This document shows, one piece after another, positions 574-12,090 of a DNA stretch of 64,000 bases. The number at the start of each line of letters is the position of its first letter. Position 1 is the stretch's first letter. The DNA comes from Dimorphilus gyrociliatus (Eukaryota > Animalia > Annelida). The notes beneath the pieces were generated by a model. The model searched no databases, was not told where the DNA came from, and saw only the letters and a program-made list of their open reading frames with translations. The stretch is taken from NCBI GenBank assembly GCA_904063045.1, contig CAJFCJ010000029.1, positions 62,001 through 126,000 on the forward strand, read 5' to 3'. A program made the translations under genes and the position numbers.

Positions 574-609
<36 letters not shown>

Positions 610-1997
610 CAACTCCTTACATCGTAGTATAAAGCTCTGTTTAAAGCACCTTCGTGTTGTCCTGGTGGTCCAATATTCCAAGTCATGCAAACCCTCTCGT
701 TAACAGCTCTATAGTATTCGTCTCTTACGCAACATGATGAAGGTACATAAGGATTTTGTCCCTCTATATTTTATAACGTTTAAAAATATATTTAAAAGCA
801 CATTATACCAATATTAAATTATGTAATAGCATTAATAAAATTGCATGCATCTTATTATATCATCAACATATTTCTTATAATATTAATGCTATTATTAATG
901 AATGATTAAGAATAAGAATCAAATAACATATAGAATCATACCGTGCGAAAACTCTTTTTCAGCAATTGACTTTTTACCAAAGTCTTTAAACCATTTTGAT
1001 TCTCTATAAATGAACCAGCTTTTCGAATTAACGGAACAACAACGAAGCTGAAAAGCGAATTTTTAAAGCTAATCATAAGCGTTTATTAGAATCATACAAG
1101 TTAAAAATCGTAGATATTTGTTTGTATAAAAAATCGATTTGATTGATTATATGGGGAATTTATTTGGTGATGCTACCTGGATTCATATCCAATGCAACTC
1201 TCTCGTACCACAGAGAATTTTGATAGTGACTCCAACTTTTGGGATATATAGAGCAGCATCTTAGCTGTTTTATCATTATAATTATAATTAATGGAAAGGA
1301 ATTGGAATATTACTTAAAAATGTATATCCGAACGATCAATCAAGTTTCATTCGTAAGTTACGTAAATAATAACATTACAGTTTTACAAGAAATAATATTT
1401 AATTCAGTTAGAGTATTGCAAAATACATTACCTTTTCCTGTGCTTTATCCCAAGCCCTTGTCACATCCCTATTGAATTCCTCGTGAAGGTCAACTCCATA
1501 CTGGTCTCTTAAAGTATCTTCCATTATACTTTTGACTTTATTTCCGATTTGAGTACGGAAGACACCAGCCAAAAGTCCTCCAAGAAAGAATCCAACAGCA
1601 ATTACAATCAGACATATACTATAGCTAAAGATTAAGCATTTGTTCTCCATCATGCTTCCAGTGCAACCAAGTAAAGAGATGATAAAAGTTATACATCCTG
1701 TAACTAAAAGAATGTAAGCAGCCACCTCAAACAGAGAACTTCCAATAATATGAGTTAAGTAGTTTCTATCGATAATCAACCATAATCCAACTCCTATAAG
1801 GGTTGCTCCCATACACTATCATGAAGATGAACATTTATTAATAATCTTATTACTAATAATAATAATATAGAGATATCTATTATTTTAATAAATTCGAAAA
1901 AAGACCGAATAGTGATATTTACCCATGCCAGCGACGAAAATATAAATAAAAGATATTTATAAAAACTTATACGCTCATTCGTTTTAGACGGCAACAT
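380..1997 (-). CDS. Tetraspanin 1 (6-Cys EC2, CD151/TSPAN-like), multi-exon with alternative exon 3
   Basis: Exons read manually: 1997-1923, 1815-1432, [1264-1177 or 1047-942], 763-621, 535-380, all with GT-AG and consistent phases. Four TM helices; EC2 motifs LRCCS, YVPSSCC, C, GCY; ends ...RKQEMVKH*. Confidence 0.92.
575..606. repeat. (TA)n microsatellite in the last intron of tetraspanin 1
   Basis: About 16 perfect TA units. Confidence 0.95.
942..1047 (-). CDS. Tetraspanin 1 alternative exon 3b (LRCCSVNSKSWFIYRESKWFKDFGKKSIAEKEFSH)
   Basis: Acceptor ttttcAG at 1049-1048, donor GTatga at 941; 106 nt, phase 0 to phase 1; homologous to exon 3a (LRCCS..KSW..Y..S.W). Confidence 0.85.
1177..1264 (-). 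CDS. Tetraspanin 1 alternative exon 3a (LRCCSIYPKSWSHYQNSLWYERVALDMNP)
   Basis: Acceptor aaacAG at 1266-1265, donor GTagca at 1176; 88 nt, phase 0 to phase 1, no stops. Confidence 0.85.
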
Positions 1998-2116
1998 CTT
2001 CCTATGTCTAAAAACAGGCAGATCTTCTTTACCTAGAAGTCTTCGCTCATATCAATCTACCTTTAGAACAGGTTAAAAACGTGACTAATATCTTCAGTCT
2101 TCGTTATTTGTAATAT

Positions 2117-2157
2117 CAAAATGGCAGCTTGTACAAAAATAAAATGGCAGCCATTTT
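2117..2157. promoter_or_regulatory. YY1/Pho-like AAAATGGC motifs, one as the palindrome AAAATGGCAGCCATTTT, in the divergent tetraspanin promoter
   Basis: caaaatggcagc at 2117-2128 and an 8-bp inverted repeat at 2141-2157. Both ATGs are preceded by apparent splice acceptors, so the start sites probably lie in this central region. Confidence 0.5.
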
Positions 2158-2477
2158 GTATTCCTCTACAAGCTACAGTCTTAAAATGCAACGACATTGT
2201 TTCGGATCTCCATCACTGAAAAGTTCAGGTGTGAATTGAATTATCTACCGAGTGTTTTCGTGCGGTTTTCCGCACAAATCGGCTTTTAAAACGAATTTTC
2301 CGATATTTTAAAGAATACATAAAATATATATTGATCTATTCGATTTTTGATTAAAGTTAGTATATTTAAATTGCCTAAGTAAATCCAAGTTAGCCTCAGA
2401 CGTATACCTGTTAAAGTTATCTCCATTAATCATCTAATATTTTTCATTAATACTATGTTTACTTGCAGCTTTTTAAA

Positions 2478-4642
2478 ATGGGAATCAAAGGAAGAGAGTT
2501 GTCAAATGTGGCTCAATGTGTTCGGTATTTTCTATTGGTAACAAACTTAATTTTTGCCGTAAGTTACATTGTCTTGGTATTTATATAAATAACAATATAA
2601 CCCCCTCCCTTTTTCCAATTTTATAGATGGCTGGAGCGGCAATGATAGGAGTTGGAATATGGCTGGTAGTCGATAGAGACTTTTTAACACCTCTCGTTGA
2701 AATCGACTTGTTTAGGGCTGGCCTATATATGGTTTTAGTTTGCGGTGTTGTCATTTTTGCCGTCTTCTTTCTTGGGTGCTTGGGTGCAATGATGCTGAAA
2801 AAAATATTCCTTATCATATATTTCATTGCTCTTCTTATCATAACGTGCGTCCTGTTTGTTGCTGCAATCTTGGCAATTGTAATGCGAACAAAGTTACGAG
2901 ATGAAATTAAGAATACAATGATGCACAACTTGAAAAAGAGATACGGAGTTGATTTACACATCGCTAAAAATAAAGCTGTTACCTATGGCTTTGACAGGGC
3001 TCAAGAATACGTAATAATGCATTATATTATATTTATTTTATTCTAAACAGAGAAATTAATATCATATCTTAATCTTTTTTACAGCTTAGATGTTGCGCTG
3101 TTGATGATAATGGTTGGGGAAATTATAGAGAATCAGATTGGTGGCGGCAGCAACCGGGACAAGTAGGTGAGTCGAGTAGTTAGAAAAATGATTAATTATT
3201 TATTGCTAATTGATACACTGATTATTCAAACATACAAACAAATTCGTATAAGGTATAAGATGGGGTAAGCACTATACCGATAATGTATCTAGAAATAAGC
3301 ATTTGGATATTAACGTCAATCATAATCATCATAACTAGGTAATGCCAAAGTTTACGTCCCGAAATCTTGCTGCTATAAGGTAGCAGGAGAGGACTATAAT
3401 TCAGATGATTTGAAAAAATGCCAGACACCTGACGGAGGTCCTCCCAGAGATGAACAACCAATTCCCAACAATTTTTTGTATATGAAGGTGACTAACGCTC
3501 AATACATTGTTGCCTACTTTTTCTAGGTGGTGCCGAGCGCGTTAATGTACCGTCTTCGTGCTGTGCAGTGATACTGTACACTGGCCGCTATGTAAACAAG
3601 CAGAAATGCCAAACGTATCAAAATAAAGCGTTACCTGCTGGCGCTCGAGAGAATTATACGTACTATCGTAAGGTACTAAAAGAATGCCCTATTGATTACA
3701 ATATTGCAAAAAAACAAAAAATAAAGCTAGGAATATTTTACAATAAATGCAAAAATAATAATTTCGCTCTCTGTTTCTATTATATTTGCTTGAATGATTT
3801 TTTTGTCAATCAAAAATGAGGTACAAGGGGAATGATCCTTTAATTGTTTTATCAATATTGAAACGTCGACGATTTACAGTGTATCATGAAGGCAAAGATG
3901 AATTCTAATCCATAATTGATTATTCATATGCCTTATTTATAGACGATAAGAATCGTCCACGCGTTCCTGAAAGCTGCTGTTACGTTGATCTATACAAGGA
4001 TACAATTTTGGATAAGGAAAAATGCCAGACATACCAGTTTGGTCCACCTACAAAACCCGGTGGGAGTTCAAATCCCATGGTTTATCATAAGGTACAAAAG
4101 ATGATATACTTTGGAAATGGAGCGTCTATATTTCATATTGCACTGTATTTTCACCTCTTTCATTTTAATATCGCGCTCGGCACATTCTTGCTCCAAGTCA
4201 AATCTATTACCCAGAGAATAATTCAAATAAATGAAAATGATATTTATATGAGATCTAGCATGAAATGATAGGTAATTGATTTGCTGAGGCAAGAATTGTC
4301 AATAGTTTATAGCACCAGCCTTTGTATGTAGATGCTAGTATCTCTCTATTTCGCTTTTCTTGTTTTCCCTTTTACCTAGTGTGATTTAATATTGAAATAG
4401 CTATAAAATACTAATATATTGATCTCTTCCTCAATGAAGGGCTGCTATTCGCGAGCCGTTGAATTCTTAAAGGAACACGTCATCTTTATCATCGGTTTCG
4501 GATTTGGTGTTGCAATAGCATTGGTAAGTACATTCAAAAACATATTAATTGTTCTATAAAACAATTAAAAAAAACCTTTTTTCAATTTCAGATATCTGGA
4601 ATGGTCTTTTCGTTGATTCTTTACTGCTCCCTAGAGTATTAG
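2478..4642 (+). CDS. Tetraspanin 2 (6-Cys EC2), multi-exon with three alternative exon 4 copies
   Basis: Exons: 2478-2558, 2627-3010, 3085-3166, [3339-3487 or 3527-3672 or 3943-4091], 4440-4523, 4592-4642. Four TMs; motifs LRCCA, PxSCC, KC, GCY; ends ...YCSLEY*. Confidence 0.93.
3339..3487 (+). CDS. Tetraspanin 2 alternative exon 4A (GNAKVYVPKSCCYKVAGEDYNSDDLKKCQTPDGGPPRDEQPIPNNFLYMK)
   Basis: aactAG acceptor, AAG|GTgact donor; 149 nt, phase 1 to phase 0, open frame; absent from the ORF track. Confidence 0.85.
3527..3672 (+). CDS. Tetraspanin 2 alternative exon 4B (GGAERVNVPSSCCAVILYTGRYVNKQKCQTYQNKALPAGARENYTYYRK)
   Basis: ttttctAG acceptor, AAG|GTacta donor; 146 nt, phase 1 to phase 0. 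Confidence 0.85.
3943..4091 (+). CDS. Tetraspanin 2 alternative exon 4C (DDKNRPRVPESCCYVDLYKDTILDKEKCQTYQFGPPTKPGGSSNPMVYHK)
   Basis: ttatAG acceptor, AAG|GTacaa donor; 149 nt, phase 1 to phase 0. Confidence 0.85.
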
Positions 4643-4699
4643 AGAGTGTCTAGTTATTTTTTTACTATCTGAATGTTTTATTTTTTATATATATAAATT

Positions 4700-4764
4700 T
4701 ATAGATATGTATTTAAATTATATGATATAAATGTCTATATATATATATGTATATAGAAATATAC

Positions 4765-4804
<40 letters not shown>

Positions 4805-4909
4805 TTTATATATGTATATATTTATATACAAAAATTAATAGTTTTTAAATAATAATTAAATATCTTATTCATTTTCTTGTTATTTAAGAAATATACTCTT
4901 ATTATACTG

Positions 4910-4941
<32 letters not shown>

Positions 4942-4945
4942 TGTA
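4700..4945. repeat. TA-microsatellite-rich tract downstream of tetraspanin 2
   Basis: Several (TA)n runs, e.g. ~4768-4800 and ~4908-4942. Confidence 0.85.
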
Positions 4946-6036
4946 AATGTTGTGAATGGGTAGGTAGTCTGAGTGTAATATTTCCTCCTCAGGTTATTAA
5001 GTATGTACACAATTTTTGTACGATTTGTACAATTCTATTTACAGTACAAAACCGTCGAGTTTTTTAGTTTATATATTATTTATTTCAATCCTTTTATTCT
5101 TTATTATTTCGCGTGTTGATTGTAATCTTCCCAAAAAGAGATTGTTCATCTTCCATAACAGAAAAACGTGTACTAAACAAGTATTGAATAAATTATTGTA
5201 ATACTAGTAATACTATCAATTTGACAAGTGTGTCAGGTATAATCGTTTGCATCAGATATACAGTATAACATATATTAATATATCTTGATCAGGGGAGGAT
5301 GTTATTAAATACAAGAGCAGAGACAAAAGTCAAAAGTTGTTTGTAAAAATGTCGATTTTACGTGATAAAGAAAACTATGCAAATGAAGCTATTTTATGAA
5401 AGAAAATACTTTAAATCAATGATAAGTATATTAATAAACCAACACGATAACAAAAATTAATAACTTACAAGGAATAGTGGTATAATGTATCTAAACTGCA
5501 AATCGTAAAGTTAAAAGTAAAGTTTAGCAAACAGTAGAGTAAATATAGACCGAGCATAGCGGAAATGTTTACATAAGTACGCAAGCGGCCATCTAACTGA
5601 ATGCGCATTTAGAAAAGCAACTATTGAGCAATAGCAACGACCCGTAGGGTTTTTTCAAACAACAGAGAGAAATATTATCATATTTCACCTGGATTGTAAG
5701 TTCAGTTCAGTATTCTGCCTTAATTATTAAACAAAGAAGGTAAACTATATTTTTATTAAAAAATATTTTAATTAATAAACAGTCAATCTGTAAGAAACTG
5801 CGTATTATCGTTAACAACTTTGTTGATCTGCATCTTGATTTTAACTTTTAATGAGTTGATGATCATTTAATTATTACAAACCTGATTATAGGTAATCGCT
5901 GTTATTACGCAATAAGTATTAATAGAATTATCGGTTTATCCGTTTATCCGCAAATGATGGCAGTTCATAAGCTTCACAAGTGTAACATATTTTTAAACGC
6001 AGCAAAAAGAAAAAAAAAAAAACAGATAAAATCGCA

Positions 6037-10895: not shown

Positions 10896-12090
10896 ACCAT
10901 ATCTTACCAAAGTTTAAAAAAACTTGTACTTGTTGTATTTATATTTTTTAGTCAACGCTTTTTGTTCATTTAAATAAATTTTGTTAAGAAGCCATAAAAT
11001 CTTTAAAAATACACACAAATTCTGAAGGAATGATTTCGTTGCATTCTTTTTTTCTGATAACCAAGTTCCAACTTAACGTACAAAATTCAAATTACAATGA
11101 AAGCCTAAATAACGTTAACGGTCACTTTCACTGTACTTCCTTTCCCCGTTTAACAGCTTTCGCTTAGGCTGTCTTATAGAAAAAAATTTTAAAACGATTG
11201 ATCTCTTATCAAACACTTATGGTAGACGACGGAACATACAAAAATTGTTATTGTTGTTGTTATTATTATTAATACAGACAAACCATTATAAAGTCACTTA
11301 AGCCAAGAGAAATCAACATAATTACGGAAATTTTATATTTTCCAAAATGAAGGAGAGTTTCAAGACCTGACCTCTTTCCAAGATGTTCAATTATATTGCA
11401 CTATATACCATATAGTTTGTTACTATTTCTCTGTCTACATTACATCCATCGCTAACATCTATAATGTCGTCTATATGCTAATAAAAAATTTGAATAATTT
11501 TTCTTTCACTCCATCTATATCTCTTCTCTTAGTCTCTTTTTAGGTGAAATACACTGTATATCGCGCAAACAATTTATTGAATATAAGGAAATATTCTCAA
11601 TTTCAATAAACAAAACTATATACAAACAATCTACAATCTACTAACTTAGTTATAAGATTGAAGACGATGACGATTTTCATATCATCGACTTACACTTTAT
11701 ACACATTATCATAAGATATACTTTGCTCTCTCTCCCCTCCTCTTTCGACTATAATAGACTTCCTGACTGATTTTAGGTGTTCTTATTTATGCAGTTAACG
11801 ATAACTTATTCACAAATAATCGTATACTGTATACTACACACACTTTATACTTGATGTGCGTACATATATAGTACATTTTGCAATGGAAAAATACAAGTCC
11901 ACTTATTGTTGCCTTTAAAATTTTTGGTGTATATTGCTGCATTAGAATTCAGAGTGTTTTCAGAATGTTTAAATAAAAAAATTAAATAAAGGGATAGCTT
12001 AACAAGCTTATGTATGTATGCAACATGCAAAGATGGATGTTTTTTCCGTATAACTTGCTTGGATCGTCTTCTGTATGTTGCTTTCCCGTT

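What the first reader, a model, noticed from the sequence alone, without database searches (positions are those of the whole stretch)
3339..4091. Tetraspanin 2 has a cassette of three mutually exclusive exons encoding the hypervariable EC2 subdomain
Seen: three tandem exons (149, 146 and 149 nt) all encode V-P-x-S-C-C...K-C-Q-T...Y-x-K, all run phase 1 to phase 0, and all end AAG|GT. The cysteine scaffold is kept while the loops differ strongly. Any two together are out of frame. This is a small Dscam-style exon array placed on the recognition surface of a tetraspanin. I do not know of a described equivalent, but I cannot search. Inference: isoform-coded tissue or partner specificity, or recognition diversity.
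Basis: partly seen in the sequence, partly recalled or inferred. Interest (0 to 1): 0.88.

Follow-up and report, generated by a model that had tools for sequence, protein, structure and literature searches.

The report
Three-way alternative exon in a tetraspanin
A membrane-organiser gene (a tetraspanin) of the tiny marine worm Dimorphilus gyrociliatus has three interchangeable copies of one exon, and RNA data show each message uses exactly one, giving three proteins that differ only in the outward-facing, partner-binding part of the loop.

Summary
Three tandem homologous exons sit at 3339-3487, 3527-3672 and 3943-4091. They share phase (1 to 0), AG|..AAG|GT borders and the VPxSCC..KCQT..YxK scaffold. 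Spliced RNA contigs from four public runs join constitutive exon 3 (ends 3166) to each of a, b and c, and join a, b and c to exon 5 (starts 4440). No listed joint links two cassette exons.

The gene is Dimorphilus gyrociliatus DgyrCDS14006. Its public 356-aa model wrongly strings all three cassettes together. The exons are old or fast-diverged (38-40% aa identity) but intact. In a diverged lineage exon a shows 6 synonymous and 2 non-synonymous changes, so this is not neutral decay.

An AlphaFold model puts the cassette in the non-helical variable subdomain of EC2. Exons a and b are only 39 nt apart, and b's only branch-point motif lies 7 nt from a's donor. That argues for steric exclusion. Frame incompatibility covers the other combinations. 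One strong RNA duplex is a candidate regulator.

Four mollusc relatives have a single exon here. I found no published tetraspanin equivalent. "Dscam-style" is overstated, because there are only three variants.

I confirmed it by RNA and found it conserved in Capitella. Verdict: a new member of a known kind (mutually exclusive exon cluster). Partner specificity is untested.

The parts
2214..2355 (+). Non-coding 5' exon of tetraspanin 2, spliced 2355>2469
   Evidence: GT..AG joint in X1, X3 and X4
2469..2558 (+). Exon 1 (ATG at 2478): N-terminus and start of TM1
   Evidence: Joint 2558>2627 in all four runs. Translation.
2627..3010 (+). Exon 2: TM1-TM3 and EC2 helices A and B
   Evidence: Joints. 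99% identical to P0001. Model helices.
3085..3166 (+). Exon 3, constitutive: the CC(A) motif and first half of the variable EC2 subdomain. It ends with 1 nt of a split codon.
   Evidence: Joint 3010>3085 in all four runs. Frame arithmetic.
3339..3487 (+). Cassette exon a (149 nt)
   Evidence: E3>a and a>E5 joints in X2 and X4. 6 synonymous and 2 non-synonymous differences in the X2 lineage.
3488..3526 (+). 39-nt spacer between a and b. Its only branch-point-like motif (CTAAC, 3492-3496) lies 7 nt from a's donor and 31 nt from b's acceptor.
   Evidence: No a>b joint is listed. All spliced introns seen in these two genes are 68 nt or longer.
3527..3672 (+). Cassette exon b (146 nt), with the strongest polypyrimidine tract and the highest word depth in X4
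   Evidence: E3>b and b>E5 joints in X4, depths 1428 and 1349
3530..3541 (+). 5' arm of a 12-bp GC-rich RNA duplex, inside the start of exon b
   Evidence: Pairs with 4172-4183. dG about -27.6 kcal/mol, and 0 of 300 dinucleotide shuffles reach it. Function is untested.
3943..4091 (+). Cassette exon c (149 nt), the copy closest to the family consensus (GPP, N..Y)
   Evidence: The full-length X1 contig carries c only (= P0001). The X4 loose end at 3940 equals the end of exon 3.
4172..4183 (+). 3' arm of the duplex, in the intron between c and exon 5
4440..4523 (+). Exon 5: the GC motif, helix E and start of TM4
   Evidence: a>E5 and b>E5 joints. P0001 reads ..YHK|GCY...
4592..4642 (+). Exon 6: end of TM4, the tail and the stop codon
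   Evidence: Joint 4523>4592 in X1 and X4. Translation.

Best explanation
Tetraspanin 2 (Dimorphilus gyrociliatus DgyrCDS14006) carries a cluster of three mutually exclusive exons made by tandem exon duplication. Each mature mRNA contains exactly one of a, b or c between constitutive exons 3 and 5.

The three resulting 275-276 aa tetraspanins have identical transmembrane helices and an identical constant EC2 scaffold (helices A, B, E). They differ in ~49 residues, from the PxxCC motif to just before the final GC. These residues lie in the disulfide-stapled variable EC2 subdomain, which in studied tetraspanins makes the specific partner contacts.

Shown:
- the exon anatomy;
- single inclusion of each exon in RNA;
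- intact coding capacity, and purifying selection on exon a.

Inferred:
1. a and b cannot be spliced to each other. The spacer is 39 nt, and b's only branch-point motif overlaps the region occupied when a's donor is bound. This is steric exclusion of the alpha-tropomyosin exon 2/3 type.
2. Every other wrong combination (none, a+c, b+c, a+b+c) shifts the frame to a premature stop, so it is non-productive.
3. A strong duplex between the start of exon b and the intron after c may loop out b and c and favour a>E5 splicing. This is speculative.
4. The biological role is to switch the lateral or trans partner specificity of one tetraspanin among three states.
For: - Anatomy and frames.
- Homology of the three exons, with conserved cysteines.
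- GT..AG joints E3>a, a>E5, E3>b, b>E5 and E3>c in RNA contigs of X1, X2 and X4. The full-length X1 contig, translated as P0001, carries c only.
- No joint between two cassette exons is among those listed.
- Exon a has 6 synonymous and 2 non-synonymous differences in a 90-95% identical lineage. Exon c keeps its frame despite a 6-nt indel.
- Tetraspanin identity: Pfam PF00335, E = 6e-39, full length.
- Cassette location in the non-helical EC2 segment, residues ~183-234.
- The 39-nt spacer, with a single CTAAC 7 nt from a's donor. The published median intron in this species is 66 bp (PMC7854359).
- Duplex dG of -27.6, beaten by 0 of 300 shuffles.
Against: - The RNA evidence is assembled contigs, not reads. 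Contigs drop rare forms, one joint was not displayed, and absence of double inclusion is not proven.
- Isoform proportions (roughly b > a > c in X4) rest on word depth, a poor measure.
- There are no data on tissue, stage or sex.
- There is no comparative genome to test conservation of the array, the 39-nt spacer or the duplex. Four mollusc relatives lack the array.
- In the close strain exon c shows 3 non-synonymous and 0 synonymous changes plus an indel. That could mean relaxed constraint on c.
- No protein partner is known.
Confidence: 0.85

Rival explanations
1. Only one cassette exon is functional. The other two are decaying duplicates included as splicing noise.
For: Exon c in the close strain has 3 non-synonymous and 0 synonymous changes plus a 6-nt indel. 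Each metatranscriptome contig shows only one isoform.
Against: All three ORFs, cysteines and splice sites are intact despite only 42-47% nt identity between copies. Exon a shows 6 synonymous and 2 non-synonymous changes. In X4 all three are joined to exon 3, and a and b to exon 5, at depths of hundreds to more than 1000. Different samples have different dominant exons: X1 has c, X2 has a, X4 has b.
Confidence: 0.04
2. The public gene model is right. All three modules are included through internal donor sites, giving a 356-aa tetraspanin with a triple PxxCC module.
For: P0151 (DgyrCDS14006) is annotated that way.
Against: None of the joints that model needs is listed (a donor inside exon a to 3527, or a donor inside b to c). 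The joints that are seen use the full exons one at a time. No other family member among about 160 fetched has more than one PxxCC module.
Confidence: 0.02
3. It is a Dscam-like recognition-diversity system: stochastic exon choice giving cells individual surface identities.
For: A tandem array on an extracellular recognition surface, and one strong long-range RNA duplex.
Against: There are only three variants in one cluster. There is no set of selector sequences pairing with a common docking site. Nothing shows stochastic use, and tetraspanins are not known homophilic recognition molecules.
Confidence: 0.03
4. The exons are mutually exclusive, but the switch tunes folding, trafficking or glycosylation of the protein rather than partner specificity.
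For: Nothing here identifies a partner. The variable loops differ in charge and length.
Against: By established knowledge of CD81, CD9 and CD151, this subdomain carries the specific partner contacts. The scaffold cysteines are conserved in all three exons.
Confidence: 0.15

Closest known systems
FGFR1-3 exons IIIb/IIIc
   Same: Tandem-duplicated, mutually exclusive exons replace part of one extracellular domain. The scaffold is kept while the binding surface, and so partner specificity, changes.
   Different: Different protein family (Ig domain of a receptor kinase). Two variants, not three. Choice there is controlled by known splicing factors (ESRP, PTB). Here regulation and partners are unknown.
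Alpha-tropomyosin exons 2/3 (steric-hindrance MXE)
   Same: The branch point of the downstream exon lies too close to the donor of the upstream exon, so the two cannot be spliced together. Here the spacer is 39 nt and the branch motif is 7 nt from the donor.
   Different: This is inferred from sequence only. It explains a/b but not b/c or a/c exclusion.
Drosophila Dscam1 / 14-3-3zeta / Mhc exon arrays with docking-selector RNA pairing
   Same: A tandem array of homologous exons used one at a time. There is one unusually stable long-range duplex (3530-3541 with 4172-4183).
   Different: Only three exons. There is no common docking site with one selector per exon, and no conservation test was possible.
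Annelid and helminth coq-2, and metazoan Mhc, MXE clusters (PMC7434440, PMC3912159)
   Same: They show that MXE clusters exist and are conserved in annelids.
   Different: Unrelated genes. None affects a tetraspanin.
Neighbouring paralog tetraspanin 1 (window 942-1264, minus strand) and its Capitella teleta orthologue CAPTEDRAFT_21307
   Same: Same clade of tetraspanins and same principle: an MXE pair in the variable EC2 subdomain, RNA-supported and conserved between two distant annelids.
   Different: There the duplicated exon is the CC-motif exon 3 (two copies), not the PxxCC exon 4 (three copies).

Membership tests
Tetraspanin (Pfam PF00335) | Profile match above the curated cut-off over the full length | tested here: met
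   P0001 scores 134.4 bits (cut-off 32.1), residues 15-275 on profile positions 1-225
Tetraspanin (Pfam PF00335) | Four transmembrane helices with a small EC1 and a large EC2 | tested here: met
   AF2 model helices 10-42, 54-83, 86-112 and 236-275. EC2 spans 113-235. Mean pLDDT 82.8.
Tetraspanin (Pfam PF00335) | EC2 cysteine signature: CCG, PxxC(C), a later C, and GC before TM4 | tested here: met
   CCA (G replaced by A) in exon 3. VPxSCC and KCQT in every cassette. GC at the start of exon 5.
Mutually exclusive exon cluster from tandem exon duplication | Adjacent exons homologous to each other, of similar length and the same phase | tested here: met
   149/146/149 nt, phase 1 to 0, 30-43% aa identity with conserved Cys
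Mutually exclusive exon cluster from tandem exon duplication | Each exon is found alone between the flanking constitutive exons in mature RNA | tested here: met
   Joints. P0001 for exon c.
Mutually exclusive exon cluster from tandem exon duplication | No productive transcripts with two or no cassette exons | tested here: inconclusive
   No such joint is among those listed, but one joint was not displayed and contigs drop rare forms. All such combinations give premature stops.
Steric-hindrance MXE (tropomyosin 2/3 type) | Donor-to-branch-point distance too short for spliceosome assembly | tested here: met
   39-nt spacer with its only YTNAY motif 7 nt from the donor. Other introns in these genes are 68 nt or longer. 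Sequence inference only; splicing was not assayed.
Dscam-type array with docking/selector RNA competition | One docking site complementary to a selector next to every variant exon | tested here: not met
   Only one strong duplex (start of exon b with the intron after c). No shared docking site was found.
Dscam-type array with docking/selector RNA competition | A large repertoire, with stochastic choice per cell | tested here: not met
   Three variants. Cell-level choice is not testable with these tools.
CD151/TSPAN11 orthology group | Orthology to vertebrate CD151 or TSPAN11 by phylogeny | not tested
   Mollusc relatives carry inconsistent automatic names: CD151-like, tetraspanin-11-like, tetraspanin-4-like, CD82-like. 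The tree has no vertebrate rows.

The most novel reading that the evidence does not exclude
Annelid tetraspanins repeatedly use exon cassettes to swap modules of the variable EC2 subdomain. Examples are exon 3 in tetraspanin 1 (conserved from Dimorphilus to Capitella), exon 4 in tetraspanin 2, and possibly a TspanC8 gene elsewhere in this genome. On this reading a few genes encode a regulated 'tetraspanin code' of partner specificities. Exon choice in tetraspanin 2 would be set by a combination of steric exclusion and a long-range RNA duplex.
Probability: 0.2. Interest if true: 0.7.

Novelty: new member of a known kind. Interest (0 to 1): 0.55.

Why it matters
Tetraspanin specificity is normally thought to be diversified by gene duplication (33 human genes). 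Here one gene swaps the partner-binding half of EC2 by mutually exclusive splicing, which the searchable literature does not describe for this family.

This gives three natural isoforms with identical scaffolds. They could be used to map which EC2 residues select partners.

The public gene model of DgyrCDS14006 is an artefact that concatenates the three cassettes. Similar clusters may be hidden in other lophotrochozoan annotations.

The neighbouring paralog's exon-3 pair is shared with Capitella, so this mode of diversification is ancient in annelids.

Tried and rejected
- Orthologous arrays. I fetched genomic loci of four mollusc relatives: Liolophura L001, Argopecten L002, Argonauta L003 and Solemya L004. 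Each has the same intron positions but a single cassette exon, with no extra tblastn hit at E <= 5.
- The Capitella locus L005 is the orthologue of tetraspanin 1, not 2. It has one exon 4.
- No annelid orthologue of tetraspanin 2 was identified. In the tree it lies outside the Tsp1/Capitella clade with weak support.
- NCBI isoforms of nemertean, bivalve, gastropod, insect and urchin relatives differ at the N-terminus or in alternative homologous last exons, not in EC2.
- Two exact-word scans of JGI metagenome contigs for genomic DNA of related strains found nothing.
- The look-up of encoding contigs could not fetch the Tubulanus and Lineus X2 isoforms.
- U2/U12 incompatibility is rejected: all donors and acceptors are GT..AG without U12 consensus.
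- Haplotype or assembly artefact is rejected: the copies are only 42-47% identical.
- A fourth or decayed cassette copy was not found by tblastn in the window.
- I did not submit isoforms a and b to searches or folding, because spliced sequences have no reference.
- Six literature searches found no tetraspanin MXE.

Full report
**What is in the sequence**

The + strand between 2214 and 4642 carries a compact tetraspanin gene. From the sequence and RNA joints its exons are:
- a non-coding exon, 2214-2355;
- E1, 2469-2558 (ATG at 2478);
- E2, 2627-3010;
- E3, 3085-3166;
- three cassette exons: a (3339-3487, 149 nt), b (3527-3672, 146 nt) and c (3943-4091, 149 nt);
- E5, 4440-4523;
- E6, 4592-4642.

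E1+E2+E3 total 547 nt. All three have AG acceptors and AAG|GT donors.

With any single cassette the mRNA encodes an open 275-276 aa protein. With none, any two, or all three, a premature stop follows.

The three peptides share VPxSCC, KCQT and a terminal YxK. Otherwise they are 30-43% identical by MAFFT (38-40% by global pairwise alignment) and 42-47% identical at nucleotide level. The exons are GC-richer (41-47%) than the introns (29%). A 49-codon open frame in intron-like sequence has a probability of about 0.016.

**Identity**

A HMMER search with exon 2 found P0001 (278 aa, 99% identical). A word search with P0001 then found P0151, annotated DgyrCDS14006 of the annelid Dimorphilus gyrociliatus.

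P0151 is 356 aa. It reads through a truncated a, a truncated b and then c, so it has three PxxCC modules. No other protein among about 160 fetched relatives has more than one such module. None of the internal junctions this model needs is seen in RNA. The public model is an annotation artefact that hides the cluster.

Pfam confirms a full-length tetraspanin (PF00335, E = 6e-39).

**RNA evidence**

Four public runs hold the gene: three metatranscriptomes (coral, marine, invertebrate) and one 2017 run of 'organism A'. The last is clearly RNA, because its contigs are spliced.

Laid on 612-4660, the contigs give these GT..AG joints:
- E3>a (3166>3339) and a>E5 (3487>4440) in X2 and X4;
- E3>b (3166>3527) and b>E5 (3672>4440) in X4;
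- E3>c in X1, and as an X4 contig whose loose end is the last 14 nt of E3.

The X1 contig (997 nt) is a full-length mRNA with c only. Its translation is P0001, which reads ..YHK|GCY.. across the c>E5 junction.

No a>b, b>c or a>c joint is listed. One joint was not displayed, and contigs cannot prove absence.

In X4 the word depths suggest b > a > c (about 1400, 400-900 and 280). This is a poor measure. The dominant assembled isoform differs between samples: c in X1, a in X2.

Parts of the introns after E3 and after c are retained in several runs.

**Selection**

The X2 lineage is 90-95% identical. In exon a it differs at eight sites, six of them synonymous. Exon a is therefore under purifying selection.

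The X1 strain carries a 6-nt in-frame insertion at the start of c. It also has three non-synonymous and no synonymous changes in c, against five synonymous and one non-synonymous in E2. The numbers are too small to separate relaxed constraint from diversifying selection, but the frame is preserved.

No second lineage covers exon b.

The three cassettes are no closer to each other than to the homologous exon of molluscs (25-45%). The duplications are therefore old, or divergence was fast.

**Where the cassette sits**

An AlphaFold2 model of P0001 (mean pLDDT 82.8) shows TM1-3, EC2 helices A (114-131) and B (140-156), and the CC motif at 158-159. A mostly non-helical stretch follows, up to helix E/TM4 (236-275).

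The cassette is residues ~183-234. That is most of the variable, disulfide-stapled subdomain. The constant scaffold is encoded by constitutive exons.

From established work on CD81, CD9 and CD151, this subdomain carries the specific partner contacts. This point rests on my own knowledge and was not tested here.

**How exclusivity probably works (inferred)**

1. Exons a and b are 39 nt apart. The only branch-point-like motif upstream of b's acceptor is CTAAC at 3492-3496. It lies 31 nt from that acceptor but only 7 nt from a's donor. All introns seen spliced in the two tetraspanin genes are 68 nt or longer. The published median for the species is 66 bp (PMC7854359). Splicing a to b should therefore be sterically impossible, as in alpha-tropomyosin exons 2/3.
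2. The b-c intron (270 nt) is ordinary. Exclusion of a+c and b+c must rest on frame incompatibility, and presumably NMD, or on regulation.
3. A 12-bp GC-rich perfect complement joins the first bases of exon b (3530-3541) to the intron after c (4172-4183). Its dG is about -27.6 kcal/mol, and no dinucleotide shuffle out of 300 reached that. If it forms, it would loop out b and c and bring a's donor near E5. This is a hypothesis only. No second genome was available to test covariation.
4. U2/U12 incompatibility is excluded.

**Distribution**

Four mollusc relatives (L001-L004) share the intron positions around this exon but have one copy only.

In a maximum-likelihood tree, tetraspanin 2 falls in a lophotrochozoan clade beside, but outside, the group containing tetraspanin 1 and its Capitella orthologue. 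No orthologue with a genome sequence was found. Two metagenome scans for related genomic DNA gave nothing.

**The neighbour**

Tetraspanin 1 lies head-to-head on the minus strand. It has two alternative copies of the CC-motif exon: 3A (1264-1177, 88 nt) and 3B (1047-942, 106 nt). Each is joined singly to exons 2 and 4: 3B in X1, 3A in X2, and both in X4.

Its Capitella teleta orthologue, CAPTEDRAFT_21307, has the same pair in the same order. The short form ends ..NP and the long form ends ..SH. Both have proper splice sites and the same length modulo 3.

Cassette diversification of EC2 is therefore ancient in annelids. Another note reports a possible TspanC8 case elsewhere in the genome, which I did not check.

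**Comparison with what is known**

Mutually exclusive exon clusters from tandem duplication are a well-known kind. Examples are FGFR IIIb/IIIc, tropomyosin, Dscam1, Mhc and, in annelids, coq-2 (PMC7434440, PMC3912159). Six full-text searches found no such cluster described in any tetraspanin.

The closest functional analogue is FGFR IIIb/IIIc: half of an extracellular binding domain is swapped on a constant scaffold. The Dscam comparison fails on repertoire size and on docking/selector architecture.

**Verdict**

This is a real, expressed, three-way mutually exclusive exon cluster. It is a new member of a known kind, in a family where it appears undescribed. The mechanism of exclusion is partly explained from sequence. 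The biological role (partner switching) remains an inference.

Noticed in passing
window 942-1264 (minus strand); L005:10904-10985 and 11250-11349: Tetraspanin 1 has a mutually exclusive pair of CC-motif exons (3A 88 nt, 3B 106 nt), each spliced singly in RNA contigs. The Capitella teleta orthologue has the same short ('..NP') and long ('..SH') pair in the same order, so the pair predates the split of these annelids.
   Followed up: yes
window 3339-4091 / protein P0151: The public gene model DgyrCDS14006 (356 aa) concatenates truncated exon a, truncated exon b and exon c through unsupported internal donors. This gives a tetraspanin with three PxxCC modules, which is an annotation artefact.
   Followed up: yes
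window 1923-2355: The two head-to-head tetraspanin genes have overlapping divergent 5' exons. Tsp1 transcript contigs reach 2225, and Tsp2's non-coding first exon spans 2214-2355. One X4 contig links the two regions, and there is an alternative joint 2225(+3)>2469.
   Followed up: partly
window 3167-3365 and 4092-4374: The intron after exon 3 (X3, X4) and the intron after exon c (X1, X2, X4) are partly retained in RNA contigs, at about 10-25% of exon depth in X4. This may reflect slow splicing around the cassette.
   Followed up: no
window 3943-3946 (X1 strain; protein P0001 residues 183-190): A closely related strain in a coral metatranscriptome carries a 6-nt in-frame insertion at the start of exon c, plus three non-synonymous and no synonymous changes in that exon.
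   Followed up: partly
proteins P0014/P0272, P0162/P0273/P0274, P0291/P0309, P0189/P0281: In nemertean, bivalve and sea-urchin tetraspanin genes, NCBI isoforms differ by alternative homologous last exons (second half of TM4 plus the cytoplasmic tail). This is a different tandem-exon switch in the same superfamily.
   Followed up: partly
window 575-606 and 4700-4950: (AT)n/(TA)n microsatellites lie in the Tsp1 intron and directly after the Tsp2 stop codon. I kept them out of the reads query.
   Followed up: no
L001-L004 versus window 2627-3010: Exon 2 of the Dimorphilus gene corresponds to three or four exons in the mollusc relatives. This is consistent with the intron loss reported for this compact genome.
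   Followed up: partly
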